Source: Fimbriosthenelais zetlandica
Taxonomy: Eukaryota
DNA length: 64,000 bases
Assembly (NCBI GenBank): GCA_977030845.1
Contig: OZ365116.1
Location: 20,832,001 to 20,896,000 of the forward strand
Direction of reading: 5' to 3'
The notes below the pieces were generated by a model that did not search any database, had not been told where the DNA came from, and was given only the letters and a program-made list of their open reading frames with translations. The translations under genes and the position numbers were made by a program. Positions within the stretch are counted from its first letter, which is position 1, and each line of letters begins with the position of its first letter. Shown piece by piece: positions 16,601 through 47,210 of this stretch.

Positions 16601-18294
16601 GCAGGTCTTTACTGAAGGTGTTAAAGTATCCTAGTTCTACCTCACTGGTGGTGCTCACACTGTCACTACGTGAAGCCAGCGCGGGAGGATTAAATGTGGC
16701 GGGCAGAGGCAGTGGATTACCACTGGCATCCGTCCCCAACAACCAGGCATATAAACGTCTAAAAAATCACAAACACATCATCATCAGCTACACCAGAAAA
16801 ATATATTCCACATTTTAATAACCAATTATGAATCCCGGCTAAGTTAATAAAAACCTGCTTGAATTTTGTCTTTACATATTAGGAATATTTTAGGAGGGGC
16901 AGTGTACCTGTTGAGGGACATATCCCGCCTGAGTACGGCCTTGATAGCCGCAGTACACAACTTGTACATGTCAGGTCTGGTAAGCTGACTGTTGTGCATA
17001 GGAAAACCAATGAGTAGAAGATCCAAGGCTGACCGCTGTACTAATACACTCTGGTCTTGTATGGAGCTGCATAGGCCCTCCACCTTCAAATAGAAATCAC
17101 CTTAATTCATTACAGAGTTCAGTTGTATAAGAATAACCATCTTTATACTATCCTAACACAGGTCAACTAGTATATTTTAAGGGTTTAAAAAATATTATCA
17201 AATAGAACATGATTGAATCATTGGACAGTGAGCTACTCACGAGAACATCGATGTTGGTGCCCATGAAGTGGAGCTGGTCTTCCATGCTTTGTTTCTTGTT
17301 GAAATGGGAGACTACAAAGTTGATGGCGGCCAGTCGAACCCCAGGAACTGTTAGGACACACTCCCAAAGACAGCCATGGAAAAACGCTGGCTCAGCAGAC
17401 TCAGCAAAGTCCTCAAGTAAATGGTTCGTTCTGTAATGATCGAAAATATAATGCTTCAATACTGAAATCATAAATTCAAGATATTGATATATGAAGAAGC
17501 TATTGTAATCAATTTAGAGTATCAATAATACCAGATATATTTCAGTTACTGTAGACTAGGACTGCCAATATACCAACCTATCAAAATGTTCTGACCCTTC
17601 CTCCAGACCCGGAAGAAGACCAAGCAAGAGACCAGTAAGTCCTGGTCTGATATAGCGTCCTAGGGTAACAAAGTGTTTCTCATAGATGGCCAGTAAAACG
17701 GGCTTAACATTCATAGCTGCGTAGGCCAGGAGAGGAAAAAGGCCAGCACTGTAGGTAAAGAGGTCTGCCGCCAGGCGCTGTGTGCCCACACATTTAAATA
17801 TGATATCATACGTCTCTAAAGCTTTAAGGTGGACGCCAGATGGCAGGGCTGGATGGAGACATTGCGCCAGGCGCTTCCCTATCGTCACACGTTTAGGTAT
17901 CACAGCATATTTCACATGACTAGAAAGAACCTGAAATGTAAAATACGAACACATTATCATGATTATCTACAGAATTAAATGTACATGTACTACCGTATAT
18001 TATCTACCTAATTTTTTTACCAATAATTATTACACTGATATGGCGTAAATCAACTAATACTAATTCATGTATTTTCTTGAATTTTCGAACAATAACATAT
18101 GGGAATTAATGCTGTCATTTCTAGTTGTCTCTCACAATAAAACTTACCTTGTTCAGCTTGCCAAGGGCTGATATAAGGTCTGCCCATTCGCTGGTATTCT
18201 CAAAGTTCTTGAGGGCCTTCTCCACTTGAGAGATGTACGCCCTATACTTAGAGTCTCCCAGCAACTCACACTCCTCAATGTTTAGAACATTCAT
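4607..18294 (-). CDS. DOP1: Dopey/DOP1 Golgi-endosome trafficking protein, 5' about 2100 codons (3' end runs out of the window)
   Basis: Phase-consistent exons: 18294-18148 ([49 protein letters not shown]), 17930-17578, 17430-17241, 17083-16908, 16758-16572, 16371-16135, 15965-15705, 15335-14538, 14432-14228, 14137-13761, 13575-13423, 12242-12139, 12032-11880, 11777-9666, 9394-9169, 7491-7303, 7177-7049, 6961-6821, 4767-4607 ([16 protein letters not shown]...). The Dopey N-terminal motif [21 protein letters not shown] is diagnostic. Confidence 0.95.
6470..6553 (-). CDS. DOP1: Putative 84-nt in-frame cassette exon of DOP1 ([28 protein letters not shown])
   Basis: Acceptor ccccatgcag|, donor |gtaagt, length 28 codons, phase 0-0 matching both flanking exons, no stop codon. 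Confidence 0.6.
12041..12084. repeat. Short intronic tandem repeat (cattaatgata(a)ccaca, about 2.7 copies)
   Basis: Read directly at 12041-12084, inside a DOP1 intron. Confidence 0.85.
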
Positions 18295-26514: not shown

Positions 26515-29500
26515 TTATATGTCCATGTGTTCTAGCACCTTTCTTGATTCTTCCCTCTCCTTGCGAACAGCAGCTAATTCTTGTTCCTGCTTCCTCAACA
26601 TTTCCTTCAAGCGGTTAATCCGACCCATGGATGAATGAACGCTGGGAGTGGAATTGGAGGTGGGTTCTGATATCCCAGATGAACCATTCTTCTCCTTAGA
26701 TGAAGTGTTCAGATCGAAATCTGGCAAACCTGATACTTCCATCTCTGCTAGTAATCCACTGGAATCTTTATCAGTGCCAACCCTAACCACTGAGGTGTTT
26801 GAAGATAAGACATCACCATTTTCACCAGTCTTAAACTCATGTTCAGAATCCTCCCAAAAAGAAGAGTCTCTTTCGCTCACGCCCTCTTCTTCATTTCGCA
26901 ATGGTTCATGTTCAGAAGGAACAACTGATGGGACTTCTTTCAATTCAATATCATCACTAGGTTTACATTTTTTTTGTCTGCTATTAACTGATAGGTCGTT
27001 GACTTTTTGGTCTTTCAGTGGTCTACCCCTCAGTCTTTTCCCACCAACAATTCTGGTTGAGGTGAATGGATGAGCTCGTTTCAGATCAGAAGTACACTGA
27101 AGTGCGTCTGCAGCACTACTTTGGTCTTTTCCATGGAGGGATCGCTGGGTGCTACCAATACTAGAGGATGAATTTTGCTCGTCACATTTTTTTGAACTGA
27201 TATCACTATCACTGGGTTTTTGAAGAGTCTCTGTTATTTTTTCTACTCCAGAATCTTGCCCAGACTCTGGTCTCCCGGTCACCAAGCTATCATTATCCTT
27301 CACACACAGTTCAAGTTCTGACATTTTTCCATCACATGTACGTTCCTCAGCACTATCATACATTTCTGTCTTGGCTGGGTCTGTACAACAAATAACAGAA
27401 TTTTTCATTACTTTAGAAACTTTCCTTGGCCTTCCACGTAATCTTTTTTGAATTGCAGGAGGCAATGCCTGATCCCTGCTTTTTGTAGGACAATCTACCT
27501 GAGACTCTTTAGTTTCGTCAGGATGCTCTAACTCATCCTTGTTTGACACAATAGTGGGATTCTCCTCATCAGAGGCACAGCTGCTTGGGTGACTTTCATC
27601 ATCACTATCTAGCAGCGTTTTCTTGTTACGTTTTTTCCGTTTCGTCCTTTCACTTATACTGACTGAATACTTGGTGTAGGCTACAGTGTCTCCTCCACTA
27701 CCAGGCTCTGCGTTCACAACTTGTTTGCGAATGATTAACTTATTTAATTTCGGTGGTTTTCCTCTTGGTTTTTCAAATTCAATTTGATTATTAGTAGACC
27801 CTTGACACATTAGGTTTTCAACTTCATCAGTATCAGAAACACATTTAATTTCACTCTTGCTCATTGCAACTTCCTGAGGTTCACTAATTTGAGAAACAAT
27901 ATCTGTAGCACTGGACTTGGACCTTCCTCGCCTTTTCCTTGTTGAGGTTTCAGGTGTGTCTATTCCACTGTCAATGACATGCTCATTATCATCATCTTGC
28001 TTTGTTTCTGTTTTGACCTGGACGCCATCAATAGTGTCCTCTACTTTACAGGCAGTCTTGGTTTCTCTGGCCTCCTGATTATTTAAACCTGAAGTAATGT
28101 TGTCCTTTGTTTCAGAAGTATTCTCTGCAGACGGTTTTTCTGAAGGATCTGCTTCTGCCTTGATATTATCAGTAATCTTGTTGCTCGTGTTCTCTTCTGT
28201 AGAAGTACCCACTCCAGGATCACCTCCAAACAGATCATCTACATTGAGACTGCTCAAACTGTTCAGCGTCTGACGGACTTTAATATTATTTTTCATCTGC
28301 ATATTGGCTAACTTTTTCAATTCTAATTCTCTCGACCTCTGGCTTGTCCTTGCTCCCCTAGGGCGACCCCTTTTTCTTTTAAAAGGGAAGGTATTGATAG
28401 AATCATTGATGTTAGCACCCAGAGTGTCCTCTCTCTCAGCCAACATTCTGTCTATGGTTTTGCATCTGGGCCTTCCTCTTCCTCTACCTCGACCTCTTTG
28501 TCTGATGGGACTAGAAGTTGAAGGGAAGGCTTGGACAGAGTTATCGCCAGGGCTATTTGGCAGCCTCATTTCTTCAGGTGGAGATTCATTATTCTCAGGC
28601 TGATTATCATGTTGCCTGAAGAGATAATTGCCTCTCCCTCTACCTCGTCTTCTTGGGATGCAAGTGTAAGTAGGATTCGGTAAATTTTGATCATTTACCG
28701 GACCCCCCAGATCGCATCTCTGGGCTTCTAAAAGGTTCCGAACAGTCCTTAACTTCTTTGGTCTTCTTTTTCCGGCAAGAATATCTTTCACAGTTAGGGG
28801 AGCCAAAGTAGATTTGTCTGTCTCTTCCTCTGGTCTGTCTGTTGGTGAATACATAGGTTGGGGGTCAAGCGATAACATTTGTGCGTTCAGTGGCTGAATT
28901 TGAAATGGTTGGGTTAGGAATGGCTGGGGTTTCATGGACAAAGGACGCAAGGGTTTTACTGATTCTGTGTTCAGTGACTGGGGACTCTCCTTTAGTGAGA
29001 TGACACTAGTTATTTTCAAAGCCATTGGTTCACCATCAAGTGTGGACTCATCTTCTGGCCCAAGTGGTTTTATTTTAATTAAATCATTCAGTAATCCATG
29101 TTCATTTTCATTGGGCTGCTCAAAATTCACTGGGGTCTCAGTATGATCATGTTGATTTTCTTGAATTGATGGGTTGTAGTCTACTTGATTTTCCATGGGT
29201 AGGCTTTCCTGTAAATTAGATTCAAGAGTATGTTGATCTGACTGTGAACTAACATCGGAATGTACATCAGGGACAGTATAACTAATTTGGTCTGTAGGAG
29301 AATGTCTTTGACCTTCTGATGAATCAGAAAGTAAAGGAGAGAAAGGTGCGCTGGTGAACACAGGAGGTGTCAAATTAACAAAAAATTCACCAGACACCTG
29401 AACAACAAAATCATCAGAGTCATTCTGAGATACTTCAGGCTTCTCAACATTTCTTAAATCCACAATGATTCCACCTGGCGTACCCTGTCCTTTTGTATCA

Positions 29501-32478
29501 AAAATATTTAGAAGATTATTAGTATTGACTTTGTATAACAAGGCACCGTCTCCCGAGACTTTGGAGCCATCACTGGTGTTGGATCTCTCGTCTTTCTGGG
29601 ACAGACATGTATCAGCTTCAGACGTTGGATCAGTGGTCTCTGATTTCTTCTCTGAGCAGCTCGCTGGTGATTTAGTATTGATCAGAGATGGTAAGAAGTC
29701 TGAATCATTCTTAGATGTTAATGTATCAGTTGGTATTTTAGATGGTGATAATTCTGGGGCAGTAAGGGATGGTGATAATTCTGTAGCACTGACAGTTTTC
29801 TCTGGTGCTTCATCAAGTTGTAAAGTTCGAGATTTTGTTGATGATTCCTCTGCATGTGTCGGTGATTCGCCAGAGTTTGAACATAGCAATGATTCCTCAG
29901 CGCTAAGAGTACGTGATGTGTCCAGGGATGATGATGACAGGTCAGCAGTCACAGTCTGTGAGGAATCAAGGGACGCTGACAAGTCTCCACAACTCTTAAT
30001 CGGTGACAATTCTTTAGCACTGAGAGTCTGTGGTGAATGAGGCAGGGATGACAGATCTCCAGGACATGTTAACATTTCTGAACTTTTGAGATCCACTGAT
30101 GAATCTGTACTTTTTACACACAAGGGTGATTCAGTATTTGTGACAGATGATATTTCTGGAGTTTCTTCAATGTTTGATGATTCTGTGGGTTTTTCATGTG
30201 TTGATAAGTCTGTGGTTTTTTCAGGTGTTAATGAGTCGGTGGTTTTTACAGGTGTTGATGCTTCAGGCGTATTTATAATTGGAGACGGTTCGTTATTTAC
30301 ATCTTGTAATGAAACAACATTTGTCAGGGATGGTTCAGGATCAGTTTCAAGAGATTTTAAACCTGTAGTTACAGGTTGTGTAGGACTTAGAGGTGGTATT
30401 AATTTAGAAGTTTCTACAGGTGCTGACAAATCTGTAGCACTTGGAGAAGGGGTAGAGTCCTCAGCACTGGGGCATGAAGGTTCTGTATTTCCAACAGGTT
30501 CAGGACTTCTTGGAGACAACTGCAGCTCGGCGGTTTCTGATGTTCGGGTCCCCTGATCAGGTTCATCTTTAGGATCCATTCTCTCTTCTTTAGGGGGCTT
30601 AATTCTATTTTCTTCAGTATCCAGTCCCTCTTCCTGATCCTTTGCTTTAGGCTCCATTCTTTCTTCTGATTTCTGAGGAGCTTTCACATCCTCCTCCTGT
30701 TCTTCATTTGGTTTCTCAGGTGCAGGCCCTGTTTCCTTGTCTAGCGTCAACGGTTGATGGTCAAGACAGGCTTTAGACTCCTCAGCACCAACATCTGTAT
30801 CAAGAATATTTGATGTATCCCGAATTTTACACTCATTGTCCTTATCAATAGATGGACAATTTTCCTCCTTCTCCGGGCTACTTATTTTCACATTGAGTCC
30901 CTGCTCTGTTGCATATTGGTCAGTATGTATGTTGCCTTTACTTTCATGATGTTCTTGATTTAACACAGAAGGCTTATTGTCTATGTCAGTCACATCTGTA
31001 GCTTTTATGTCAGTACAGTCTGATGTAGTGCTGCTCATTACTGGGTGTTCTTTATTCAAGCCAAGTTTCCCTGAACAACTCTTCCTGGCTGTGTGTGTCT
31101 TAGCCCCACCATCTTTCTTGGTTATAGCACCAGGCATTATCATATCAGGAAGTATCTCCCTCAGTTTATCATCTAACATGGCCTCTCTCTGTTGGAGATC
31201 ACATTCATCACTGGCCTTTGTACATTCACCAGCAATAACTTCTCTAAATCTAAACTCTATTCCCTTTGAAAATCCCTGTATCATACCAGGAGCATCCTGC
31301 ACAACAATGTCCCTACCATCCCTCTCTCCTTGACTCAGTAGGTGGGACAAATCTGGTACGCTATTTTCTTCACCGTCTTCATTTTCCACTAGGTGTTCCT
31401 TTATGTCTAGGTTGATCTGCAGTTCATAAGCCAGCTCCTGTGCTTCTTTTATATTTTCATCATCTTCAAATGTGGTCTTGTACAGACCAGACTCGGTAGA
31501 TTCAATCTCAGATGTACGACAGTCGTTACTAAATTCTGCCAGACGGTCAACTACAGAAGACATTTCATTTGCTGTGTCAGTGGATGAGGAAGACCGATCA
31601 TCATCTTCAGACTTGTTTGGCTCTAGATGTGCTTGGCTGGTCGTTAGGGGAGGGGCATCAGGAGCAATGGAAGCAGCATCTCCAGTCAAACTAAACACAC
31701 TTCCAATCTTCAATCCTAAGTCATCACTATTATCACTATTATTATCACAGACTTCATTCGGAGAGCTCGGTTCAGGCCCTCTGGCAGAAGTACTCAGTTG
31801 AGTAGTTGTATTGGTAGAATCTGTCAGAAGAGTAGAAATGGCTTTCTTATACCAGGGTTGGTCCTGTTCTTTACTGGCACTCAATAAGGTGGTTCTCAAG
31901 ATACTTTTGGCAGGTGACCTCGGTTGAGCAGTGGGGGTAACTAGTTTGACCCCTGGTTGTAGAATGTTGTTTGAGATCATTCTAGGAGCTGATGCACCAC
32001 TTGTACTGATTACAGAGCTGGGGATGAACAAACGGCCACCAGAAGGAAGAGTTAAAGAGCTATGTGGTCCTGATATGACAGGCACTGTACCCACACTGCT
32101 ACTGACCACTTGTTGTCCTACCTGAGGTGACAACATTCTCACAACCCGGGTGGGAGTTCCACTATTAACAATTCGAGTACCGGGAGGCGATACATTGTTA
32201 TATGTTAATAGTGGTGACATATTCTGAATATTTGGAGCCCTTGGCGTAGACGACACAAGACGTATCACTTTCTTGATCGCTGGCGTAGTAGTGGCAGTAG
32301 TTCTTGGTGGTGGAGTCATCCCTATCGGTAGGAGCAAGGTTTTGGGTATTCCATTAACTGTAGCTTGAATCAGCTGGTATCTCGGTGGTTTAGATGCCCC
32401 TGTAGATGCAGTGGATAATGTGACTGTGTTGGGAACATTGCTCTGCGTCACAACTGTTATTCCTTTTATATTAGCCAT
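26515..32478 (-). CDS. Giant disordered nuclear protein A (1987 aa from the first ATG) with AT-hooks and C-terminal coiled coil; single coding exon
   Basis: 6-kb uninterrupted ORF; first in-frame ATG at 32478 (the track start is a TTG). Four RGRP AT-hook cores, psi-K-x-E motifs (IKAE, VKTE), and terminal MGRINRLKEMLRKQEQELAAVRKERE. Confidence 0.9.
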   Translation of the reverse strand: MANIKGITVVTQSNVPNTVTLSTASTGASKPPRYQLIQATVNGIPKTLLLPIGMTPPPRTTATTTPAIKKVIRLVSSTPRAPNIQNMSPLLTYNNVSPPGTRIVNSGTPTRVVRMLSPQVGQQVVSSSVGTVPVISGPHSSLTLPSGGRLFIPSSVISTSGASAPRMISNNILQPGVKLVTPTAQPRSPAKSILRTTLLSASKEQDQPWYKKAISTLLTDSTNTTTQLSTSARGPEPSSPNEVCDNNSDNSDDLGLKIGSVFSLTGDAASIAPDAPPLTTSQAHLEPNKSEDDDRSSSSTDTANEMSSVVDRLAEFSNDCRTSEIESTESGLYKTTFEDDENIKEAQELAYELQINLDIKEHLVENEDGEENSVPDLSHLLSQGERDGRDIVVQDAPGMIQGFSKGIEFRFREVIAGECTKASDECDLQQREAMLDDKLREILPDMIMPGAITKKDGGAKTHTARKSCSGKLGLNKEHPVMSSTTSDCTDIKATDVTDIDNKPSVLNQEHHESKGNIHTDQYATEQGLNVKISSPEKEENCPSIDKDNECKIRDTSNILDTDVGAEESKACLDHQPLTLDKETGPAPEKPNEEQEEDVKAPQKSEERMEPKAKDQEEGLDTEENRIKPPKEERMDPKDEPDQGTRTSETAELQLSPRSPEPVGNTEPSCPSAEDSTPSPSATDLSAPVETSKLIPPLSPTQPVTTGLKSLETDPEPSLTNVVSLQDVNNEPSPIINTPEASTPVKTTDSLTPEKTTDLSTHEKPTESSNIEETPEISSVTNTESPLCVKSTDSSVDLKSSEMLTCPGDLSSLPHSPQTLSAKELSPIKSCGDLSASLDSSQTVTADLSSSSLDTSRTLSAEESLLCSNSGESPTHAEESSTKSRTLQLDEAPEKTVSATELSPSLTAPELSPSKIPTDTLTSKNDSDFLPSLINTKSPASCSEKKSETTDPTSEADTCLSQKDERSNTSDGSKVSGDGALLYKVNTNNLLNIFDTKGQGTPGGIIVDLRNVEKPEVSQNDSDDFVVQVSGEFFVNLTPPVFTSAPFSPLLSDSSEGQRHSPTDQISYTVPDVHSDVSSQSDQHTLESNLQESLPMENQVDYNPSIQENQHDHTETPVNFEQPNENEHGLLNDLIKIKPLGPEDESTLDGEPMALKITSVISLKESPQSLNTESVKPLRPLSMKPQPFLTQPFQIQPLNAQMLSLDPQPMYSPTDRPEEETDKSTLAPLTVKDILAGKRRPKKLRTVRNLLEAQRCDLGGPVNDQNLPNPTYTCIPRRRGRGRGNYLFRQHDNQPENNESPPEEMRLPNSPGDNSVQAFPSTSSPIRQRGRGRGRGRPRCKTIDRMLAEREDTLGANINDSINTFPFKRKRGRPRGARTSQRSRELELKKLANMQMKNNIKVRQTLNSLSSLNVDDLFGGDPGVGTSTEENTSNKITDNIKAEADPSEKPSAENTSETKDNITSGLNNQEARETKTACKVEDTIDGVQVKTETKQDDDNEHVIDSGIDTPETSTRKRRGRSKSSATDIVSQISEPQEVAMSKSEIKCVSDTDEVENLMCQGSTNNQIEFEKPRGKPPKLNKLIIRKQVVNAEPGSGGDTVAYTKYSVSISERTKRKKRNKKTLLDSDDESHPSSCASDEENPTIVSNKDELEHPDETKESQVDCPTKSRDQALPPAIQKRLRGRPRKVSKVMKNSVICCTDPAKTEMYDSAEERTCDGKMSELELCVKDNDSLVTGRPESGQDSGVEKITETLQKPSDSDISSKKCDEQNSSSSIGSTQRSLHGKDQSSAADALQCTSDLKRAHPFTSTRIVGGKRLRGRPLKDQKVNDLSVNSRQKKCKPSDDIELKEVPSVVPSEHEPLRNEEEGVSERDSSFWEDSEHEFKTGENGDVLSSNTSVVRVGTDKDSSGLLAEMEVSGLPDFDLNTSSKEKNGSSGISEPTSNSTPSVHSSMGRINRLKEMLRKQEQELAAVRKEREESRKVLEHMDI

Positions 32479-33399
32479 GTCTGTAGCATTCCACTCAGGC
32501 AGTGGATAAGTGGATTCGTTTTGAAAATGGTAGTACTGAATTATGAATGCCAAAAGGCTGACGCAGGATCAAAATGGAGCCATACGTTCATCTGAAACAG
32601 AAAGAAATCTCGTGGTCAAATTTCAATGATTTAAAAACAGCCACTTCATCTGATATTTGCATATAACCTACTTAGTCCTATAATTTATAGCAACATATGA
32701 TTGTGAATTTAATAGTAGGGCTGAGGGCAAAATATTATAGAAGCACTGCCACACCCCTTTCTGTGAAAACCCATACACCATCAGATAACGGTATACACCT
32801 TGATAGTCATAAATAAAAGGAATATTTTGTGGTGAGCTTATTGATATTTAATGTATTGGAGGCATTAACCCCAGCCCTACCACTGTGTCAAGATGACATG
32901 CTGCTCATTCCGTACCACATACATCAACATAACTAAAACCTCGTGGTCTCTATGAGTTCCTCTACCAACTATAAAGCCAATACTCACCCACATATCAATG
33001 AGACTAAGCTTTATAATCCAATACTGGCCTCAATTTTTGCAAACTTCGTCTTCCACTAGCCGAGACTGGCTGCTCAACACTTCCGACAGACATTATTTGG
33101 CCTACCACGCAAACTCACTGCCTTGTTTATCCCAGTATGACCTCATTATGAATCTGGACCGGAAAATGGATATTCAGGTTCCGCTGCGGTATTTCGATGG
33201 TCCTACCACATAAAATCAGCATACGAGGCTATAACAAAGACAACTTTCAATATAAATGCAGAACATGTAATAATATAAGAATATACCTAAATTCCTGAAC
33301 CTACATAGTCATATTATTTAAAATGAGCATGATAAAAATGATCATTTATTTCAGCTTGATGTCACACCCGAGACAGACCGGAAGTGTGCCAACAGCAGC

Positions 33400-35850
33400 G
33401 GTGGGTTAGTTCACGTTTCTCCCGCGTGGCGGCATAACCGTTCTAAAGAAAAATGGCTTAAAAGAAACAAACTGTAGGCCTACTGCCCGGGCCTACTGTA
33501 AGCCTAGAAGCTGTTTATGACTTCAACTTTTGTCCATCAAACTCACATCAGAGCTGTTCATTCATCTAGGACTATATATAGACCTCGAGGCGAATGGGGA
33601 TCATCGACCCCGCCCACCATTTTTCCTCTTCTTTTTTTTCCTTTTTTTTTTTTTGGGGGGGGGGGGGGGGGGGCGGTGGTGCTTCCTTAATTTTATCTAG
33701 GCATATGACTATGTTACGCCAAAATAGGCCTAAAGTTTTTGCCCCCGCCTAGAGCTCTTTTCTCAGCTAGGCCCGACCCCGCCAGGCGGCGCCACATCGC
33801 ACATGCATCTGCCCATGTTTTTTTAGGCCTAAGCACAGACTATGGCCTTTAGCAATGTCAAGGAACGAGATAGCTAGGCCTATATATATATAGTTAGGCT
33901 ATAGTTAGGTTATAGGCCTAGGTCTAGCTCCTAGGTCTAAGGCCTAGGCCTACTGGCTTGGGCTGTCCGGGGGTGGGTGTTCAAAAAGCAAAAAAATCGT
34001 GACATCCTTTAGGCCCTATGGATAGCCCCTGAAAGGCACATAATTAAATTTTCTTCACTCTCAATAAACTTTCCTTTAAGAATCGGACTTAAAATTCCAC
34101 GTGAAAAAATACAATAGGCCGAATCAGTTGTGATCAGGAGTTCTTTCCTAACAAATCATAGATTAGGCCTAGACCTAGTCGCCTCCGTAAGAAGGCGGGC
34201 ACAGTCATTGGATGAAAGTAAACTAGGCCTATCAGAGCCTCGCGTCCACTTTCCTTCCTCTCCAACCAACTCCTCTCCCCTGCTCCTTCTCACAGAGCCC
34301 TCGCCACCAGAGCGAGGCTGTTACCATAAATAGAACTAGCGTCTCATTACACACGAGAATGCGCGAGAGTCTACTGCGCACCCAACATCCGGGTAGCGTC
34401 AGTCCGCGCATGCGCATGGCATGACCAAAACAAAGCCTGCCGAAGCACTTCCCCGATAGGTTGCGCGTCTCTACTTCGAGTTTATACGTGGTTAATTGAA
34501 GGTATGTTCTGTATTATGAGTTTGCCTTGAAATATGACTGTCATAGAAGTTATTGAAGGAGTATTGGGGACAGGAAGGGACGAGATAGTGTCATAGTTGA
34601 TGGGAGTAGTGGGCAGGTTCTGAGTCGATTGTGTGCGCAACATCCGCCATGGGCAGTCTCGCCTCTCCACACCTCGCGCTCTCATTGGTCCGCTCCCTAG
34701 CCTCGCTTTGGAGTGGGGTTAGGTTTGAGGCGTCTGGAAGCGCCTGCTCAATGCCTCTAGTTAGCGCCTCTTGATATATTTTGGATGTTATTGAGAGATG
34801 TACAGCGTACTATTGAAAAGTTGTCATGTGGCTGAAGTCTTAAAGGTGTTGTTATTGGAATAGGGCTATACTAGGTCTGCTGAGCACTAGGCTTATCAGA
34901 CTGAGAGTTTAACTTTAAGAATCTATTGTCAGTTTCCAGAATATCTATGATATAGGAATATGCCCATCAGGTTTACAGAAAGACAAATTGATGTCCATTT
35001 GGAGATTTTCTTTTTCCAGGCCAATGTTTTGAATGTCATTTAGGCCTATGCAAGGCCTAAATGTGGGTTATATTTTCAAGTAGGCTCTCACATCACTTTT
35101 TTGGGGGGTGGTGGCCAGGCCCAGGATTGTGTAAATCCCTGTGAAATATTTGGGAGTGAGGGCCTGCTAAATGGGACAGTGGTGGACCTAGAGGCCGGCC
35201 TAATCCTAAGTCACGTTCCCTGATAAGCCTAGGCCAATAGGCCTATGCCTAATAATGCTTAAGAGCGTTCAGTTCCTAGCATGTCTACAGTCTAAGTCCA
35301 GGTCAAGTGAAGGTCAACCCGACGACGACCTATGCATAGCCTAGGCCCACTGCTCAATCTATTAGGCCTAGTCTACTATAGGCCTAGGCCTACTACTAGG
35401 CCTATATGCTACCTATGCCTACCGACACTGTTTTGCTATAGCCTGAGAAAATAAGGCCTATAGGCCTAACCAGTATCAGGAATAGCCCTAGGCCTATATA
35501 TCCCCTTTGCTTAGGCCTATCGGGTATCCATACCCGTCTTCCCCATCCACGTCACAATGTTGACACACTACCCCCACCCACCCCTTCCCCCCTCCCGCAC
35601 ATTCACACACCCGTGTGTGCGTTCTACCACCCATGACCTGAAAGAATCACGTGATTCTTGTGCCCATATATGGCGTGGGCGATGTCACGTGGTCGGTATT
35701 GAGGATGTCGGGCGTTATGAGCGCTGCTGCTGCTGCCGCTGCCGCTCCTCCCATCCCTCCCGCCCATCTACTCTCTCTGTGTGACTCCGTCTATAGGCCT
35801 AGAGGCTACAACAGTCTACTGCAGTTCACTATGTTATCTTGCGGGGAGCA
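33400..35850. promoter_or_regulatory. Bidirectional promoter region of the giant pair: CpG-rich core with NRF1 site, flanked by TAGGCCTA clusters
   Basis: CGCGCATGCGCA at 34405-34416, CCAAT boxes (ATTGG near 34206 and 34684), ETS CCGGAAGTG at 33378-33386 just outside, and 18 perfect TAGGCCTA between 33475 and 35801. Confidence 0.7.
33642..33673. repeat. T13-G19 homopolymer junction
   Basis: 13 T (33642-33654) directly followed by 19 G (33655-33673). Confidence 0.9.
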
Positions 35851-36835
35851 ATGGCCTACAGCTCTCTTCCACTGATATAATGATTATCTACACGAATTTG
35901 TATAGGCGGGGACCAATCTAATATTTTTGATATTATACTGGTCATCAGTCATAATTTCAAGCTGAATATGAAATAAAATAGAGCTGTCAGATTTAATAAT
36001 ATTTGGTAGAAAACTGTAAGTGAAAGTGGTAGATCAATTTACAGTCCACCTGAATGTTTACACCTGGGCTGAATGTATGCCGCTCTGGGGGTCAGAGAAA
36101 TCATCTGGGTAAAGCCTGAAGGTGTTAATACTTAGTGTAATGCTGTGATACTAACAAGTATAAATGGAATCCTGGATCATGGGAAAATTAATTTAAATTG
36201 AAAAGAATACAAAGAAAAACTAGTGAAACTAAAGCTAAACTTAAAAATGCCAAGTACATGTAGGCCTATTAATATAGTAAATTAGGACAAATTTATTCTC
36301 TACCATATTCTTTAACCAAATTTTGTTTTAATTTTTCAGTGGATTCACATAGAATGACGAAAAGTGTTTAATCCACTCTGTGGAAGCAAGGCCCAGGGCC
36401 CGCTTCATCACTCAGTGACGAGGACCCATGAATATTCATGTAAGTTACTCTCATCTATTACAATTCTCCAAGTACGAAGTTTAGTAGATAACTATTGTAA
36501 ATGATGAAGGTGAACTATTGTGTTGGGCTCCAGTATCGGTCAGTTGGACTGTCAGCTAAGCCCTCCTTCCGTCGGTTTTATTGAGGTATAATTAACAAGT
36601 GAATATGTATGAGAATGTGATATAATAAGGTAGATCAGTAGAGGAGAACAAAGACTAGAGCTGTTAGCATGGTGGACAAAGGGTAAACTATTGATATTCA
36701 CTTTACAATAATTATTTAATCATAATATATGTAGCACTATATATAAACATTTGATGGTCATCTATAATCGCTGTTGCATAATTTAATTATATGAATGTTA
36801 AGAAATAATAAATCAATATTTCTGTTCTTTTCAGA

Positions 36836-39800
36836 ATGCTTGGTGGCAATATTAGGCAAGTGGTAAGCAAACCGGAAGTGAAGATGTCCTCTCCACCTTC
36901 TAGCAAGGGACAAAGTCTGCTATCTATGAATAAAGGGGTGGTATTAGTCCGTGGTCCAGCACCAGTACCACATAAAAATGATCCACGGGTACTTATGGTC
37001 CCAAATGTTCGTCAGAATGTGCCACAGGTATTTGGGAAGAACACAGTGCTTGTCCCAGTGACACAAACACCTGATGGTAAAATGATAGCCACTGGAGCAC
37101 CCGTCCTACCACCTCGACTACAAACCTCTGGTAAAATTAGACCTGATGGAGGAACGATAACAGGTCCAAATGGTCAACAGGTGTTAGTGCCACTACCGCC
37201 TGGTGCCATGGTGAGAACAGCACCTCAAGGAAACAAACCCATAGTTTTAATGTCAGCTAAACAGACAGGCGCGAATAAACAACCAATGGTTATACAAGTC
37301 CCCAAAGGTCCAAATAACCCTGGTGCACGTCCATTATTCATGGTCCCTGTTACATCCTCAGGGGTAGGACAACATGTTTCGGGGGTAGCTGGTAAGGATC
37401 AAACGGTCAAGGTTATTGGGCAAAATAAAGGAGTCAACCTGGTACAAATGCCACTTACTGGTGGTGACAAATCCCGAGCTGCTCAGTCTATGTTTATTCC
37501 AATGCCAGTATCAGGCAAAGGGCCAGGTCAACCTATGGTACTCCTACCTAGGCCACAAAACCAGCCTGTAAAGCAAATTGTGAGACTGCCAGGAGGTACT
37601 TCTAATACAAAATCTGTGATCATCCAGGATCCAAATATGGCTAATCTTCCTAAAGGAGCCAGACTCATTCCTATGTCATCCTCAGTACCTGGAGGTCCAG
37701 TACAACTAGCTTCTTCACATGGTGCTTTTCCGGGTGGAAAGATCGTGTTCATTCCCAATTCAAATGCAGGAGGAATTCCTGGAGGAAAGACAGTTATTAA
37801 TATAGGGGCTTCATCTCAACTGAAGAAACCAAATGTATCCCTTATACAGAAAGTTTTCCCACCGAAAGGTGGAAGGAAACTGTTGTATAAACCGATGGGA
37901 GCATCTGTCAACAAACCTATTAAACCGAAGCCACCTATTCAAACTACAGATTCCTTCTTCAAAACCCCGATAGAAATCAAACCTTTAGAGGAGGAGCATG
38001 ATGATGACTTGGAGAATGTTTTGAGTGCGTTGACTGGAGGAGGGGGCAGTGTCGATCTCATGCCGGTCAACTCTGCTATCACTTCATCACCATCACCTGC
38101 TCCTGTCAATCTTGACCCTGTCCAAATAGATGGACTAGAAAGTATGGGGCTAAAGATTGACTCGGTTTATAGTTTATCATCCAACTCACTGCCAGGAGAT
38201 GGTGAACAGGCTTCAAAAAAGAGCCAAGAGGCAAGTGCAGATACAGGAAAAACATTGAATAAAAAGTCTGAAAAGAAAGATAGTTCAACAGATGGAGAAA
38301 ATAACACAAGTGTTGATGGTGAAAATGTTGATAAAGAAAGAGAGAAGGTGATACAGGAGCCAGAGGTGAATGTGGATAAGAAAGATAAAGAGCCAGATAG
38401 AGAGGAGAAACAAGCACAGACAAATGATGATACAAAATCAGAGGTGATGAATGCTAGAAGAGAGAATACAATGACTGAGGGCGATTCACTGGAGAGCGGA
38501 ATGGATCCAGATGACGACAGACTGAGCGTCGATTCTGATCAAACAGAAGTCATGGATACCTCAGATCTGTATAAAAATGATAACGGCCAGGAAGATCTTA
38601 TAGACCGAGGTGGCAGCTCTGAGAAGGAGGACAGTATAGGGAAGGAGCAGGAGATGGATGACTGTAATGATTCTGATGGGGAAATGAAGGATATACAAGT
38701 ACCAGTTTTGTCGATTGAGCCGCTCTCACCGGAAGACGAACCCTCACAATCAGGAAGCAACGCAAAACCAGAACAGTCTCTCATAGAGACAGAGACTGAG
38801 ATGGAATTCGGGGATCCCCAGAATAACAGTTACAGGCGTATAAGCCTAGAAGATGAGGATCCCAACCTGATGAGAGGGGATTGTCTTCAGGTCAGATTAG
38901 CCCAGCAGGCGGCGCGACAGCTGCAGGAACAGATGAAACAGGAGAGTGAGAACCGGGATATGGTAGCGAGAGAATGGCACATTGAGGAAGATGATGAAGA
39001 AATGGACCAGCCATTTACTCCCTCCAAGGACCTCAATAATACTGCCTCCACAGATGAAGATGGGAGAAAGGAGGAAAGTGAAGAAAAAACTAGAGAAACG
39101 CCGGAGGACAATGAATCCCATCCTTCAGAATCTGATGGAAAGAAAAGTGAGGAAAGCAATAACGACCCAAAGGAAGGTCCATCTAATGAAGAAGATGGGA
39201 GAGGAGAAGGAAAGAAGACTGGTGATGGGAAGAAAGGTGAAGGCGTTATGGATGATGCCCAGAAGGCATTGGTGGCTGCTGCACTCAATGGCTGTGAGGT
39301 AGCCGACTCTGCTGAATTAAATGATATGTTTGATGAACTCATATCTGAATATTTCACAGCTCCTGAGCGGCCTAAGCCGAGTGTACGTGTTCGCGGTATA
39401 GAGGAGTGTAGGGCTGATCTAGATGATGGACCTCAGAGTCTAGTGACGACTACAAAAACGACACCTTCTCTCCACACAGTCACTTCATTGTCACCTTTAA
39501 ACAAGTCACTCCTGTCACAAAAGCCAATATCTATCACTACTCCTTCTGGGCCTGTCACTCTGGTACAGGTTAAAGTTCCAGTGCCTGGTAAGCCTGGTGT
39601 CTCCACAATAAAATACATTCCAGTACAGCTTTCCAAACTTGGTAAAACGGGACTGAACAATGCACCCATGCCACAGTATGTCAAAATAGTTCCTAATACA
39701 ACATCCACAGTTAGCGGGGCAAAACCTATGGCCAGCAGGCTTATACCTACTGTGGCAAACCAGCGTCTGGGTGTGGCATCCAGTTCTGTAGCTTCTAGTT

Positions 39801-42418
39801 CCATCATGAAACAAGGAAAGTCTGTGTTGAAGTTCGTCATAGCACCTGGAAACAGGTTACAACCAAATTTAACTTCATCAGTACTCTCCACAGCTTCAGT
39901 AGTATCCAGACCTACAACTATACCAAGCACTTCTGCTTCTGCCTCATCTACAAAACCATTGAGTAATGTAGACCTCGAGTCCGCTATCAAAAATGCTGCC
40001 CGTAATGTGTTAGGACTTAATCCTGGTAATAAATGGACTGGACTGAAACCTTCAAAGAAACCATCACTTATACCTGGCCGGAATCTGCTGCCTCTGGTTC
40101 AAACTGGAGTGTCACTGGCACAATCCGGGGTTTCACTGGCACAACCTGGGTTTTCACTGGCACAACCTGGGGTCTCACTGGCACAACCTGGGGTTTCACT
40201 GACACAACCTGGGGTTTCACTGGCACAACCTGCATTTTCACTGACACAACCAGGAGTAACGCTGGTGCAACCTGGTGTTTCACTGACACAACCTGGGGTG
40301 TCGCTGGCACAACCTGGGGTTTCACTGGCACAACCAGGAGTAACGCTGGCACAACCTGGAGTATCGCTGGCACAAACTGGGGTGTCAGTATCCTTGCCAG
40401 TTCAAGCACCCACACTGGGAACTCTGTCATCAGCAGACACAAACAAGCCAGACAAAACCATGCATCTACTAACACCGGATAATAACCGAATAATAGTCAT
40501 TCCACCAGGGATGAAGTTGGTTCAAGGTCCTGGAAAAGTTCCTCAGTTAGTCATGGTTAACAAGCCAGACACTGAGCCTTCAACCTCCCTCAGTCCAGGA
40601 GATGTCCTAGCCGCACAACTACAAAGGGAGTGCTCAGTGTTTAATCCCAAAAAGAAAAAGAAGAAAAAGAAGAAGAAGAAAATTAAACTTCCCCCAACCA
40701 AACAATGTTCTGTTGTGTTACGCAGACTTAATATGAAAGTGGTAAAGAAAACACTCAACCTGAAGAGGATTAAACCGTCCTTCCTCTTTGAAACTGTTTC
40801 ACGGCGGCCCATGCGAGGAGCGAAAAGAAAAGCAGAAGAACTGATCAGTAATGATGCCAAACGATTCAAGACTGAGGAGAAATATCAGCCACCCAAATAT
40901 ACAGAGATACCAGATCCTCCCCCACCACCAGTAGACGCACCCACGACCACCAGTGACAGTACATCTCCTAGTAGAGTAAATATAGCCAAGGATTCAGCTT
41001 TATATCAGATCATGTCCCAGCTCCCACCCATCAGGCCAGCTCCTACCATACAACAAGCACCTCTCAATATATTACCATTAAGTCCTGGTGTCCATACGTC
41101 TCCCATGAAGCCACCACCTGGTCCAGTCTCTTTCATGCCCAATCCCCGTACCTCACTTCTTCAGAAATCACCAAAGCCCAGTCCTGTGGTCTCATCACCT
41201 CTACCTAATGTATCACCTTCTCTCATCATGGCTCCAATAAATAGGCTCTTACCACCATCATCAACAACAACAACAGCAGCAGGATCCCGTGAAATCAAAC
41301 TGACTCTGTCCTGCACTACAGCAGCCTCTAGTACCATGCCTGTTAACATCACTAAAGGCTTAAACAGCATTGCTATGTCTATGTCAGGTAGTAATGTTGT
41401 TTCTGGGACGGTCGTATCTCCTTCCCATACAGTGGTTGGACGTGTGGATGCTAACAGACAGACAGGATCCACTGGAGGTAATGTGACGTCACTCCTCACC
41501 TCCACTAATCAACCTAGTCGACCTCTGCCTCCATTACATCCAGCGGGTAAAGTGATGATACCCAATATCCTGACTAGACCTCGTTTTGCCATGCCAACAT
41601 TACAACCAGCCCCAAGACCAGTACAGGGTGTCCGCGGACCCATCCAGCCTCCCACACCCGCGACTGTCATGAAGAGTCCCACCACATTCACCCCAAGGGC
41701 TCCTATAGTCATACAACCTAATGGCACCGGCACAGCCCCGAGACCACCCTTTAGTCAAGGTAACAAACTCGACACCAACAAACGATTCCTCCTGATCAAG
41801 ACAGCCAATGGACAGTTCCTAGTACCGATGCCTGAACATGGTAATCCTATAAACTTAGCAGGTGCTCGACCTGTTAAGACCAATAATTTATCTAACCAGG
41901 CTGAGAACGTGAGTGTCCCAGGTACAGGAGAGACGGCGACGAGCAGCTCATCAGGTGCGTCAGGGACTGCCCAGACTCCCTCCTCACCAATCGTGATCGG
42001 CTCTACTAAAGATACCACTACACCACCCCTCCCTACTCCCCCTCCCCCTCCTCCTCCTCCTCCTCCGGTTAAAGAAAGTAACAGAAGGAAAAGACATGTA
42101 GAATCACCCGTCATAGTCATTAAAGACGAACCTATAGACACTGACTATGATAAGTATGAAAATAGCCCACCACCGAAAGCTAAAACACCAGACACCCAAG
42201 TCAAGATTAAGGAGGAAAAGGAAAGGGAAAAGGAAAGAGAGAAAGAGGAGGAGGATCGGGGAGAGGAGATAGAGGAGGAGGAGGAAGATGCACCCCGAGT
42301 ACCAGCTTCTCTCAATCACATGAAGAGAATAGAAGAACTGAAAGCTCGTCTACGCCAGCATGAAGAGGAGCTGGCTGCACTGAGAAAAGAACGAGAAAAT
42401 CTATCAACCACAAGTTAA
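36836..42418 (+). CDS. Giant disordered nuclear protein B (1860 aa) with heptad repeat, poly-K, PxVxL-like motif and C-terminal coiled coil; single coding exon
   Basis: 5.6-kb uninterrupted ORF with ATG one base after the acceptor ttcttttcag|. P/G/V/Q-rich N-terminus, acidic middle, 11-Lys tract, TKQCSVVLRRL, IKDEP and IKEE SUMO-type motifs, terminal MKRIEELKARLRQHEEELAALRKERE. Confidence 0.9.
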   Translation: MLGGNIRQVVSKPEVKMSSPPSSKGQSLLSMNKGVVLVRGPAPVPHKNDPRVLMVPNVRQNVPQVFGKNTVLVPVTQTPDGKMIATGAPVLPPRLQTSGKIRPDGGTITGPNGQQVLVPLPPGAMVRTAPQGNKPIVLMSAKQTGANKQPMVIQVPKGPNNPGARPLFMVPVTSSGVGQHVSGVAGKDQTVKVIGQNKGVNLVQMPLTGGDKSRAAQSMFIPMPVSGKGPGQPMVLLPRPQNQPVKQIVRLPGGTSNTKSVIIQDPNMANLPKGARLIPMSSSVPGGPVQLASSHGAFPGGKIVFIPNSNAGGIPGGKTVINIGASSQLKKPNVSLIQKVFPPKGGRKLLYKPMGASVNKPIKPKPPIQTTDSFFKTPIEIKPLEEEHDDDLENVLSALTGGGGSVDLMPVNSAITSSPSPAPVNLDPVQIDGLESMGLKIDSVYSLSSNSLPGDGEQASKKSQEASADTGKTLNKKSEKKDSSTDGENNTSVDGENVDKEREKVIQEPEVNVDKKDKEPDREEKQAQTNDDTKSEVMNARRENTMTEGDSLESGMDPDDDRLSVDSDQTEVMDTSDLYKNDNGQEDLIDRGGSSEKEDSIGKEQEMDDCNDSDGEMKDIQVPVLSIEPLSPEDEPSQSGSNAKPEQSLIETETEMEFGDPQNNSYRRISLEDEDPNLMRGDCLQVRLAQQAARQLQEQMKQESENRDMVAREWHIEEDDEEMDQPFTPSKDLNNTASTDEDGRKEESEEKTRETPEDNESHPSESDGKKSEESNNDPKEGPSNEEDGRGEGKKTGDGKKGEGVMDDAQKALVAAALNGCEVADSAELNDMFDELISEYFTAPERPKPSVRVRGIEECRADLDDGPQSLVTTTKTTPSLHTVTSLSPLNKSLLSQKPISITTPSGPVTLVQVKVPVPGKPGVSTIKYIPVQLSKLGKTGLNNAPMPQYVKIVPNTTSTVSGAKPMASRLIPTVANQRLGVASSSVASSSIMKQGKSVLKFVIAPGNRLQPNLTSSVLSTASVVSRPTTIPSTSASASSTKPLSNVDLESAIKNAARNVLGLNPGNKWTGLKPSKKPSLIPGRNLLPLVQTGVSLAQSGVSLAQPGFSLAQPGVSLAQPGVSLTQPGVSLAQPAFSLTQPGVTLVQPGVSLTQPGVSLAQPGVSLAQPGVTLAQPGVSLAQTGVSVSLPVQAPTLGTLSSADTNKPDKTMHLLTPDNNRIIVIPPGMKLVQGPGKVPQLVMVNKPDTEPSTSLSPGDVLAAQLQRECSVFNPKKKKKKKKKKKIKLPPTKQCSVVLRRLNMKVVKKTLNLKRIKPSFLFETVSRRPMRGAKRKAEELISNDAKRFKTEEKYQPPKYTEIPDPPPPPVDAPTTTSDSTSPSRVNIAKDSALYQIMSQLPPIRPAPTIQQAPLNILPLSPGVHTSPMKPPPGPVSFMPNPRTSLLQKSPKPSPVVSSPLPNVSPSLIMAPINRLLPPSSTTTTAAGSREIKLTLSCTTAASSTMPVNITKGLNSIAMSMSGSNVVSGTVVSPSHTVVGRVDANRQTGSTGGNVTSLLTSTNQPSRPLPPLHPAGKVMIPNILTRPRFAMPTLQPAPRPVQGVRGPIQPPTPATVMKSPTTFTPRAPIVIQPNGTGTAPRPPFSQGNKLDTNKRFLLIKTANGQFLVPMPEHGNPINLAGARPVKTNNLSNQAENVSVPGTGETATSSSSGASGTAQTPSSPIVIGSTKDTTTPPLPTPPPPPPPPPPVKESNRRKRHVESPVIVIKDEPIDTDYDKYENSPPPKAKTPDTQVKIKEEKEREKEREKEEEDRGEEIEEEEEDAPRVPASLNHMKRIEELKARLRQHEEELAALRKERENLSTTS
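40100..40393 (+). repeat. Coding 21-bp minisatellite, 14 units encoding Q-P-G-V-S-L-A
   Basis: Consensus CAACCTGGGGTTTCACTGGCA; 13 near-complete units plus a divergent last unit (QTGVSVS). Confidence 0.95.
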
Positions 42419-46951: not shown

Positions 46952-47210
46952 TTGAATCACATGTTGTTCTGCATGATTTGATTGCGCGATAAAACCCAGA
47001 GCTACACACAGAACATTAAAAGTACAGACTAACGGTTATCTTCATGTTAGTTGAGAAAATGAAGGTAGGATTAAGGTAGATAATTAAGGTAGGATTTAAG
47101 GAGCAATTTCTCATTCTTTCATTAGGTGATCATAGGAACAAATTGCTGCCTCTAGATTAATATGTAATATTATTTCCAATATTTTGAATTCTGCAGATCT
47201 CCTGTCCACT

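What the first reader, a model, noticed from the sequence alone, without database searches (positions are those of the whole stretch)
26515..42418. Head-to-head pair of giant, single-exon, disordered paralogues sharing a terminal coiled coil: candidate undescribed chromatin module
Seen: two ORFs of about 2000 and 1860 codons with no introns in an otherwise intron-dense window, transcribed divergently from one promoter region. They look unrelated overall but have broadly collinear architecture: P/V/G/T-rich N-terminus, then GLKIxSV[F/Y]SL, acidic disorder, basic tracts, psi-KxE SUMO-type sites, and a C-terminal helix. The tails align at 17/26 identities: A MGRINRLKEMLRKQEQELAAVRKERE (26628-26551) and B MKRIEELKARLRQHEEELAALRKERE (42320-42397). 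Inference: an ancient inverted duplication kept under shared control, with products that homo/heterodimerise or compete for one partner via the tail. A would supply DNA binding (AT-hooks) and B heterochromatin binding (PxVxL-like).
Basis: partly seen in the sequence, partly recalled or inferred. Interest (0 to 1): 0.85.

Follow-up and report, generated by a model that had tools for sequence, protein, structure and literature searches.

The report
Divergent pair of LRIF1-like disordered genes
Two neighbouring, oppositely oriented genes in what earlier scan notes call an annelid-like genome encode very long, mostly unstructured proteins that are old copies of each other and end in the same short helix, much like the vertebrate gene-silencing adaptor LRIF1, though true kinship with LRIF1 could not be proven.

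Summary
ORF A (26515-32478, minus strand, 1987 aa) and ORF B (36836-42418, plus strand, 1860 aa) are uninterrupted and point away from each other, with start codons 4.36 kb apart. Their C-terminal helices match at 17/26 residues.

The tail is specific to this family, not a generic coiled coil. A tail profile searched against 1.84 billion proteins gave eight hits:
- three relatives: a B orthologue, a B-type fragment and an A-type protein, P0006, which carries the tail at its very end;
- five repeat proteins that are not relatives.

A-type and B-type proteins share further motifs in the same order, so they are old paralogues. No Pfam family matches either protein.

The closest known analogue is LRIF1. 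It is the top protein-atlas lead for A, B and P0006. It also ends in a coiled coil, whose R-L-K triplet was part of a triple mutant that lost SMCHD1 binding. A-type tails carry R-L-K. Membership is unproven, because the Pfam LRIF1 model does not match.

AT-hooks in A are canonical and conserved. The "PxVxL-like" site in B is not canonical and fits a SUMO synergy-control site better.

Shared promoter use is untested, because no RNA runs were listed. At the only other locus I could check, no partner ORF was called within 10 kb upstream.

The parts
26515..32478 (-). Gene A coding exon, ATG to stop, 1987 aa. It encodes the A-type (AT-hook) paralogue.
   Evidence: Uninterrupted ORF. Motifs in the same order as in P0006 from another species.
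36836..42418 (+). Gene B coding exon, 1860 aa. It encodes the B-type paralogue.
   Evidence: Uninterrupted ORF. 56% identical to P0001 (1896 aa), with blocks of 100% identity, and conservation begins at M1.
26518..26628 (-). A tail, aa 1951-1987. Family-specific terminal helix with heptad core I-L-L-Q-L-L, an R-L-K triplet at aa 1956-1958 and a [RK]K[VI]LE-x-[ML]D extension.
   Evidence: AF2 helix with block pLDDT of 85-98. RLK compared with the LRIF1 m1 mutant.
42293..42415 (+). B tail, aa 1820-1860. Conserved PRVPASLNH lead-in plus terminal helix with core I-L-L-H-L-L and E-L-K in place of R-L-K.
31681..31722 (-). A motif LKI-1 (aa 253-266, DLGLKIGSVFSLTG).
   Evidence: Conserved in P0006 as IKIDSVFSLSG and in B and P0001.
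38141..38185 (+). B motif LKI (aa 436-450).
   Evidence: Identical in P0001. The B versus P0006 12-mer scores 42, above the shuffle maximum of 41.
28984..29082 (-). A: IKPLGPEDE motif followed by a second LKI motif (ALKITSVISL), aa 1133-1165.
   Evidence: P0006 has PLELKISDVVSL. B has the I[KE]PL-x-[PE]E[DE] motif twice.
38699..38755 (+). B: VPVLSIEPLSPEDEPSQSG motif (aa 622-640), the counterpart of A aa 1133-1149.
   Evidence: Identical in P0001. It is the second-best A versus B 12-mer, score 42.
38885..38935 (+). B helix LQVRLAQQAARQLQEQM (aa 684-700). Counterparts are P0006 IRSAQKAVQQLQ and A IKEAQELAYELQ (31417-31455, minus strand).
27010..28656 (-). A basic region with AT-hooks: RRRGRGRG (aa 1275-1284), RGRGRGRGRPR (aa 1326-1338), KRKRGRPRGA (aa 1367-1376), KRLRGRPRKV (aa 1678-1687) and KRLRGRPLKD (aa 1814-1823).
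   Evidence: Pattern matches. RKRGRP hooks are conserved in P0006. Pfam AT_hook scores only E=4.9.
42083..42160 (+). B: RRKRH-x2-SPVIVIKDEP-x-DT-x-YDKYE (aa 1750-1775).
   Evidence: Conserved in P0001 and as PGVRVKEEPKDTGYNK in L004/P0003.
41777..41875 (+). B: NKRFLLIKTANGQFLVP island (aa 1648-1680).
   Evidence: Conserved in P0001 and in L004 as NKKYLLIKTSSGQFLVP.
39257..39457 (+). B: 67-aa island that differs from P0001 at a single residue (aa 808-874).
   Evidence: AF2 gives no confident fold, mean pLDDT 44 with a two-sequence alignment.
40100..40387 (+). B: 21-nt tandem repeat, 13.7 copies, encoding (GVSLAQP)n.
   Evidence: Absent from P0001, so it is a lineage-specific expansion.
32479..36835 (.). 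4357-bp interval between the two start codons, the presumed shared 5' region. It has acceptor-like sites at about 32590 (minus strand) and 36834 (plus strand), CpG-richer blocks at about 33.0-33.75, 34.0-34.75 and 35.25-36.0 kb, and 19 copies of TAGGCCTA.
   Evidence: No transcript evidence.

Best explanation
A and B are real genes. They are old, strongly diverged paralogues of an unannotated family of long, mostly disordered and probably nuclear adaptor proteins. The family is built from short conserved motifs strung along unstructured sequence.

Both proteins end in the same three-heptad amphipathic helix. I read this helix as a docking helix for a coiled-coil partner. By analogy with vertebrate LRIF1, whose C-terminal coiled coil binds the coiled coils next to the SMCHD1 hinge, that partner would be an SMCHD1-type protein. 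Homo- or heterodimers of A and B are not excluded.

The two paralogues differ in how they would reach chromatin. A-type proteins carry several canonical AT-hooks, which bind the minor groove of AT-rich DNA. B-type proteins lack AT-hooks. They carry instead a conserved P-x-[IV]-K-[DE]-E-P site (a SUMO acceptor, or possibly a degenerate HP1 motif), a lysine run and basic tracts.

What is shown: the ORFs, the conservation, the paralogy, the specificity of the tail, and the presence of AT-hooks. What is inferred: nuclear and chromatin function, the identity of the tail's partner, LRIF1 ancestry and co-regulation.
For: - ORFs of 6.0 and 5.6 kb.
- B is conserved in P0001 and in L004/P0003. A is conserved in P0006, with at least seven motifs in the same order.
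- Tail similarity: BLASTP E=1e-5, hhalign E=3.7e-6, and a score above all 120 shuffles.
- The tail profile against 1.84e9 proteins gave only P0001, P0003 and P0006 plus repeat artefacts. In P0006 the match is at residues 1122-1152 of 1159.
- Generic coiled coils in the PDB reach only 17 bits, against 42-86 bits for family members.
- Between subfamilies and species, the best B versus P0006 windows are the tail and the LKI motif, both above the shuffle maximum. The SDGEM and QLQ-helix matches follow in the same order.
- AF2 models the tail as one helix, residues 11-49, with block pLDDT up to 98.
- LRIF1 clusters are the top atlas hits for A (0.80), B (0.86) and P0006 (0.83).
- The LRIF1 literature describes a C-terminal coiled coil that binds SMCHD1, a triple mutant R732E/L733A/K734E in that coiled coil that loses SMCHD1, a PxVxL motif upstream of it, and a long isoform made by including exon 2. 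A-type tails carry R-L-K about 30 residues from their end.
Against: - Pfam LRIF1 (PF15741) matches neither the whole proteins nor any piece of A, B, P0001 or P0006.
- No vertebrate LRIF1 reached E<=1e-3 with the tail profile.
- Atlas scores are below 0.9 and shared-feature counts are below 170, which the tool itself grades as a lead only.
- B-type tails have E-L-K, not R-L-K.
- There are no expression, localisation or interaction data. I could not check whether this genome has SMCHD1 or HP1.
- I obtained no real LRIF1 sequence from any tool. The direct comparison rests on published mutant positions and on my unverified recollection of the human sequence.
Confidence: 0.55

Rival explanations
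1. A and B form a lineage-restricted family unrelated to LRIF1, and the shared tail serves mainly to make A/A, A/B and B/B dimers. Together they are a self-contained two-protein chromatin module expressed from one bidirectional promoter.
For: - No sequence tool links the family to LRIF1.
- Only three related clusters turned up in a library that represents 15 billion proteins, so the family is narrow or evolves fast.
- The heptad core is regular. As I read the e/g positions, they would allow parallel homodimers and heterodimers equally (inference).
- The genes are head to head 4.36 kb apart, and the interval holds a dense cluster of the palindrome TAGGCCTA.
Against: - Three heptads with a polar residue (Q or H) at the central core position make a weak self-dimer. 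Such helices often need a partner.
- No long ORF was called on the opposite strand within 10 kb upstream of A-type P0006.
- The LRIF1 parallels listed above.
- Co-expression is untested.
Confidence: 0.27
2. A and B are paralogues, but they do not work on chromatin. They could be, for example, cytoplasmic or RNA-granule scaffolds, with the RGRP and RG tracts binding RNA rather than DNA.
For: - RGRGRG tracts (A aa 1275-1284 and 1326-1338) resemble RGG/RG RNA-binding tracts.
- Neither protein has a recognisable folded chromatin domain.
Against: - Three canonical K/R-flanked R-G-R-P hooks are conserved in P0006.
- There are several classical basic NLS-like clusters and psi-K-x-E sites.
- The nearest atlas clusters are all nuclear chromatin or transcription proteins: LRIF1, PHF21B, NPAT and SAP130.
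Confidence: 0.1
3. A and B are unrelated neighbours whose similar ends are convergent, generic coiled coils.
For: Outside the tail, pairwise BLASTP of A against B finds nothing significant. The LKI and IKPL 12-mers of A versus B lie within the shuffle range when taken alone.
Against: - The tail exceeds all shuffles.
- Library-wide, the tail profile finds only relatives. Generic coiled coils score 17 bits or less.
- The LKI motif, the SDGEM motif, the QLQ helix and the tail recur in the same order across subfamilies and species.
- B-type P0003 keeps the A-type tail extension KKILESLD.
Confidence: 0.04

Closest known systems
[quoted passage not shown]
   Same: Both are long, largely disordered proteins that end in a short coiled coil. 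In LRIF1 that coiled coil docks onto SMCHD1, and the R-L-K triplet mutated in the m1 mutant lies within it. A-type tails carry R-L-K about 30 residues from the end. Both have a hydrophobic P-x-V-type motif upstream of the coiled coil. LRIF1's long isoform includes exon 2. LRIF1 clusters are the top atlas leads for A, B and P0006.
   Different: There is no match to PF15741, and no LRIF1 appeared among the significant tail-profile hits. A and B are two to three times longer than the LRIF1 clusters listed (739-1200 aa). The AT-hooks of the A-type, the two-paralogue head-to-head arrangement and the LKI motif are not features I found described for LRIF1. B has E-L-K instead of R-L-K, and its 'PxVxL' is P-V-I-V-I.
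AT-hook proteins (Pfam PF02178; for example HMGA, and PHF21A/BHC80)
   Same: A and P0006 carry several K/R-flanked R-G-R-P cores, the defining AT-hook peptide. PHF21B clusters appear among the atlas leads.
   Different: There is no PHD finger and no other folded domain. The Pfam AT_hook score is below threshold (E=4.9), as is usual for single short hooks. B has no hooks.
SUMO 'synergy control' motif, P-x(0-4)-[IV]-K-x-E-x(0-3)-P, of transcriptional regulators (pattern recalled from my own knowledge)
   Same: B and P0001 (SPVIVIKDEP) and L004 (PGVRVKEEP) fit the pattern exactly.
   Different: This is a pattern match only, with no experimental or statistical test. The same residues could act as a SUMO-interaction motif (VIVI plus an acidic run) or as a degenerate HP1 motif.

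Membership tests
LRIF1 (PF15741) | Significant match to the Pfam LRIF1 profile | tested here: not met
   hmmscan at E up to 10 gave no PF15741 hit. It was run on the whole proteins, on 400-500-aa pieces and on 31-61-aa motif pieces of A, B, P0001, P0003 and P0006.
LRIF1 (PF15741) | Short coiled coil at the extreme C-terminus holding the R-L-K triplet that is mutated in the m1 mutant, which loses SMCHD1 binding | tested here: inconclusive
   [quoted passage not shown] A has R1956-L1957-K1958 of 1987 aa. P0006 has R-L-K about 30 residues from its end. B, P0001 and P0003 have E-L-K. A three-residue match is suggestive, not proof. No LRIF1 sequence was available for alignment.
LRIF1 (PF15741) | PxVxL HP1-chromoshadow motif upstream of the coiled coil | tested here: inconclusive
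   B and P0001 have P-V-I-V-I, with a central I rather than V. L004 has P-G-V-R-V, which fits PxVx[LMV]. The A-type has no conserved PxVxL near the tail. Other PxVx[MV] sites conserved in B are KPIVLM/KPFVIM (aa 134-139) and PSVRV (aa 848-852).
LRIF1 (PF15741) | Physical binding to SMCHD1 and HP1 proteins | not testable with these tools
   This needs co-IP, pull-down or AlphaFold-Multimer. I could not check whether the genome has SMCHD1 or HP1 genes.
LRIF1 (PF15741) | Nearest neighbours in protein-language-model feature space are LRIF1 clusters | tested here: inconclusive
   LRIF1 clusters rank first to third for A (0.80), B (0.86) and P0006 (0.83), but with 129-159 shared features, below the tool's 170 guide value.
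AT-hook (PF02178) | R-G-R-P core flanked by K/R, usually in several copies | tested here: met
   A has KRKRGRPRGA, KRLRGRPRKV, KRLRGRPLKD and RGRGRGRGRPR. P0006 has RKRGRPVGS and RRKRGRPRKA. Pfam E=4.9 is below the cut-off, so membership is met by pattern, not by profile.
Parallel coiled coil / leucine-zipper-like helix | Heptad a/d hydrophobic core within a continuous helix | tested here: met
   The core I-L-L-(Q/H)-L-L at 3-4 spacing is invariant in five tails. AF2 gives a single helix, residues 11-49, with block pLDDT of 85-98. It spans only about three heptads, and the oligomeric state was not tested.
A/B family itself (unnamed) | Tail, [LI]KI-x-S-V-[FY]-S-L motif and Q-rich helix, in that order | tested here: met
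   Present in A, B, P0001 and P0006. The tail and the C-terminal islands are present in L004/P0003.

The most novel reading that the evidence does not exclude
A and B are a co-regulated two-subunit chromatin adaptor specific to a lophotrochozoan lineage. An AT-hook subunit and a SUMO- or HP1-linked subunit would heterodimerise, or compete for one partner, through a private coiled coil. Both would be expressed from one bidirectional promoter marked by clusters of the palindrome TAGGCCTA. If the LRIF1 link is real, this would also push the SMCHD1-adaptor system back to before the split of protostomes and deuterostomes.
Probability: 0.15. Interest if true: 0.6.

Novelty: new variant of a known kind. 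Interest (0 to 1): 0.42.

Why it matters
In the papers I read, LRIF1 was studied only in human, mouse and zebrafish, where it links HP1 and H3K9me3 chromatin to SMCHD1 and is mutated in FSHD2. Suppose this invertebrate family is its distant relative. The adaptor would then be much older than its vertebrate record. It would exist in two forms, one binding DNA through AT-hooks and one carrying a SUMO/HP1-type site, and it would offer a simple natural pair for asking what the terminal helix recognises. If the family is not related to LRIF1, it is still a clean case of how disordered proteins keep homology only as a string of short motifs. It is also a small unannotated family: I found only three other clusters in a library representing 15 billion proteins. 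Without expression or interaction data, the functional part remains inference.

Tried and rejected
- Word-indexed homologue searches found one B orthologue and nothing for A, whether I searched the whole protein or the tail region alone.
- Pfam on the whole proteins and on many pieces gave only weak generic coiled-coil families for the tails and no LRIF1.
- PDB sequence searches returned only chance coiled coils.
- Foldseek of the tail helix against AFDB Swiss-Prot showed nothing.
- AF2 of the best-conserved B island gave pLDDT 44, so no fold emerged.
- The metagenome locus scan returned two loci that match only the GVSLAQP repeat of B. I set these aside as probably spurious without inspecting them.
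- Two run look-ups listed no sequencing runs, so read laying was never used.
- An exact look-up of B in public assemblies found it not on record.
- A literature search for LRIF1 peptide strings that I recalled from memory found nothing. That recollection is therefore not used as evidence.
- Rfam found nothing in the window.
- TAGGCCTA is absent from L001, which holds the 1.6 kb upstream of the B orthologue and the rest of its 9.3-kb contig.
Full report
**1. What is there**

The region holds exactly two ORFs of at least 200 aa. A runs 26515-32553 on the minus strand, with its first ATG at 32478, giving 1987 aa. B runs 36836-42418 on the plus strand and gives 1860 aa. Both translate without interruption, and the region has no N. 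The genes are divergent, with 4357 bp between their start codons.

Both proteins are S/P/T/E/K-rich and poor in aromatic residues. No Pfam family matches either, whole or in pieces. AF2 of the best-conserved B island gave no confident fold, with mean pLDDT 44 on a two-sequence alignment. They look like long disordered proteins built from short motifs.

**2. Are the genes real and conserved?**

B has a 1896-aa relative, P0001, on a Logan contig (L001). The two are 56% identical in the alignment. Blocks of 100% identity alternate with variable acidic and P/S/T-rich stretches, and conservation starts at residue 1.

A found nothing in the word-indexed searches. Its relative came from the tail search described below. 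P0006 is 1159 aa and lies on a 1.4-Mb ENA contig. It shares these features with A, in the same order:
- an N-terminal V-N-G-x3-T-x-L-x-P motif
- [LI]KI-x-SVFSL-x-G
- a Q-rich helix
- G-[IM]-E-x-RFRE
- TARKSC-x-G
- a second LKI-type motif
- RKRGRP AT-hooks
- the tail

P0003 (180 aa) is the end of a B-type gene on a 1.5-kb contig, L004. The upstream reading frames of L004 hold four further B islands.

**3. Is the tail more than a generic coiled coil?**

- BLASTP of A against B finds this match alone, at E=1e-5.
- hhalign of the A family against the B family gives E=3.7e-6 and probability 87%.
- The ungapped score of 83 exceeds all 120 global and local shuffles of B, whose maximum was 77.

A profile of the A, B and P0001 tails was searched with HMMER against 1.84 billion representative proteins. 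Only eight proteins reached E<=1e-3:
- P0001, P0003 and P0006 are relatives. In P0006 the match lies at residues 1122-1152 of 1159.
- The other five are a TPR protein, a zinc-finger-like repeat protein and three other tandem-repeat proteins. They score by adding up 3 to 11 partial matches.

In the PDB, generic coiled coils reach at most 17 bits, against 42-86 bits for family members. AF2 models the tail as a single helix, residues 11-49, with block pLDDT up to 98.

The heptad core I-L-L-(Q/H)-L-L is invariant in all five tails. B-type P0003 keeps the extension KKILESLD, which matches RKVLEHMD in A and HVREGLD in P0006. The ancestral tail was therefore longer, and it has been shortened in B and P0001.

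**4. Paralogy beyond the tail**

Taken alone, the A versus B 12-mers for the LKI motif (score 40) and the IKPL-x-PEDE motif (score 42) lie within the shuffle range, whose mean is 38 and maximum 47. But they fall in islands that are conserved within each subfamily.

Across both subfamily and species, the best B versus P0006 windows are the tail (43 and 39) and the LKI motif (42). The shuffle maximum there is 41. Matches at SDGEM and at the [VI]R-x-AQ-x-A-x2-QLQ helix follow in the same order. No other copy of these motifs exists in the window.

I conclude that A and B are old paralogues, with about 0.9 confidence.

**5. Functional motifs**

A has three K/R-flanked RGRP hooks plus RG tracts. P0006 has RGRP hooks as well. 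B has none.

L004 has PGVRVKEEP. All three B-type sequences fit P-x(0-4)-[IV]-K-x-E-x(0-3)-P, the SUMO synergy-control pattern as I know it. This is a pattern match only. HP1 binding is therefore possible, but the sequence does not indicate it.

Both proteins have basic NLS-like clusters.

**6. Gene structure and the shared interval**

B's ATG sits one base after a polypyrimidine-cag acceptor. A has a similar acceptor about 110 nt upstream of its ATG, followed by a short upstream ORF. Each gene therefore probably has non-coding 5' exon(s) inside the 4.36-kb interval. That would bring the transcription starts closer together than the start codons.

The interval has CpG-richer blocks. It also holds 19 of the window's 26 TAGGCCTA palindromes, against 0.87 expected for the whole window.

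No sequencing runs were listed, so transcription, splicing and co-regulation remain untested.

At the P0006 locus the gene calls show no long ORF on the opposite strand within 10 kb upstream. L001 holds only 1.6 kb upstream, and L004 is too short to judge. Conservation of the head-to-head arrangement is therefore not supported, on thin data.

**7. Comparison with known families**

The protein atlas puts LRIF1 (PF15741) clusters first for A (0.80), B (0.86) and P0006 (0.83). The tool grades such scores as leads only.

What the papers say about LRIF1:
- It binds SMCHD1 through its C-terminal coiled coil and binds HP1 through a PxVxL motif.
- The SMCHD1 side of the contact is its own short coiled coils next to the hinge.
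- The triple mutation R732E/L733A/K734E in the LRIF1 coiled coil compromises SMCHD1 binding.

A-type tails carry R-L-K about 30 residues from their end. B-type tails carry E-L-K.

Against membership:
- PF15741 never matches.
- No LRIF1 reached significance with the tail profile.
- No tool gave me an LRIF1 sequence to align.

My recollection of the human LRIF1 sequence suggests similar N-terminal, G-psi-KID and tail motifs. This is memory, not a test. A text search for those strings found nothing, so it carries no weight here.

I put LRIF1 ancestry at roughly 0.5-0.6, and 'works like LRIF1' (a terminal helix docking onto a coiled-coil chromatin partner) at about the same.

**8. Verdict**

- The paralogy reading is supported.
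- The functional split is half supported: the AT-hooks stand, the HP1 motif does not.
- Shared control is untested.
- 'Undescribed module' should be softened to an unannotated, LRIF1-like, two-paralogue family in what earlier scan notes call an annelid-like genome (I did not check this).

Interest is moderate.

Noticed in passing
window 33475-36268: The 8-bp palindrome TAGGCCTA occurs 26 times in the window, against 0.87 expected. Nineteen copies lie in two clusters (33475-34231 and 35041-35801, plus one at 36261) between genes A and B. Other copies sit near 19.7, 23.8, 46.2, 47.3, 56.5, 60.4 and 63.4 kb, possibly close to other gene starts. It may be a promoter-associated factor site. It is absent from L001, the B orthologue's contig, which holds only 1.6 kb upstream of the gene.
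   Followed up: partly
window 40100-40387: A 21-nt tandem repeat, 13.7 copies at 81% match with a higher-order 84-nt period, encodes (GVSLAQP)n inside B. It is absent from the orthologue P0001, so it is a recent in-frame expansion.
   Followed up: partly
window 32530-32590 (minus strand): Downstream of the acceptor-like site before gene A there is a short upstream ORF (ATG AAC GTA TGG ... TAA) ahead of the main ATG at 32478.
   Followed up: no
window 1614-3719 (minus strand): An uninterrupted 701-aa ORF that looks like a RING/B-box/coiled-coil protein with NHL repeats at the C-terminus (TRIM2/3/71-like). I judged this by eye and did not search it.
   Followed up: no
window 9662-17960 (minus strand), 47100-51800 (plus strand), 54178-56105 (plus strand): Multi-exon neighbours. 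By eye they are a DOP1/dopey-like gene, a NACHT/TPR-like gene and an acid-sphingomyelinase-like phosphodiesterase gene.
   Followed up: no
P0006 (A-type relative), residues about 486-510: The TARKSC-x-G motif is duplicated in tandem in P0006 but occurs once in A. Its function is unknown.
   Followed up: no
L002, L003: Two metagenome contigs matched only the GVSLAQP repeat region of B (29% identity). I set them aside as probably low-complexity matches and did not inspect them.
   Followed up: no
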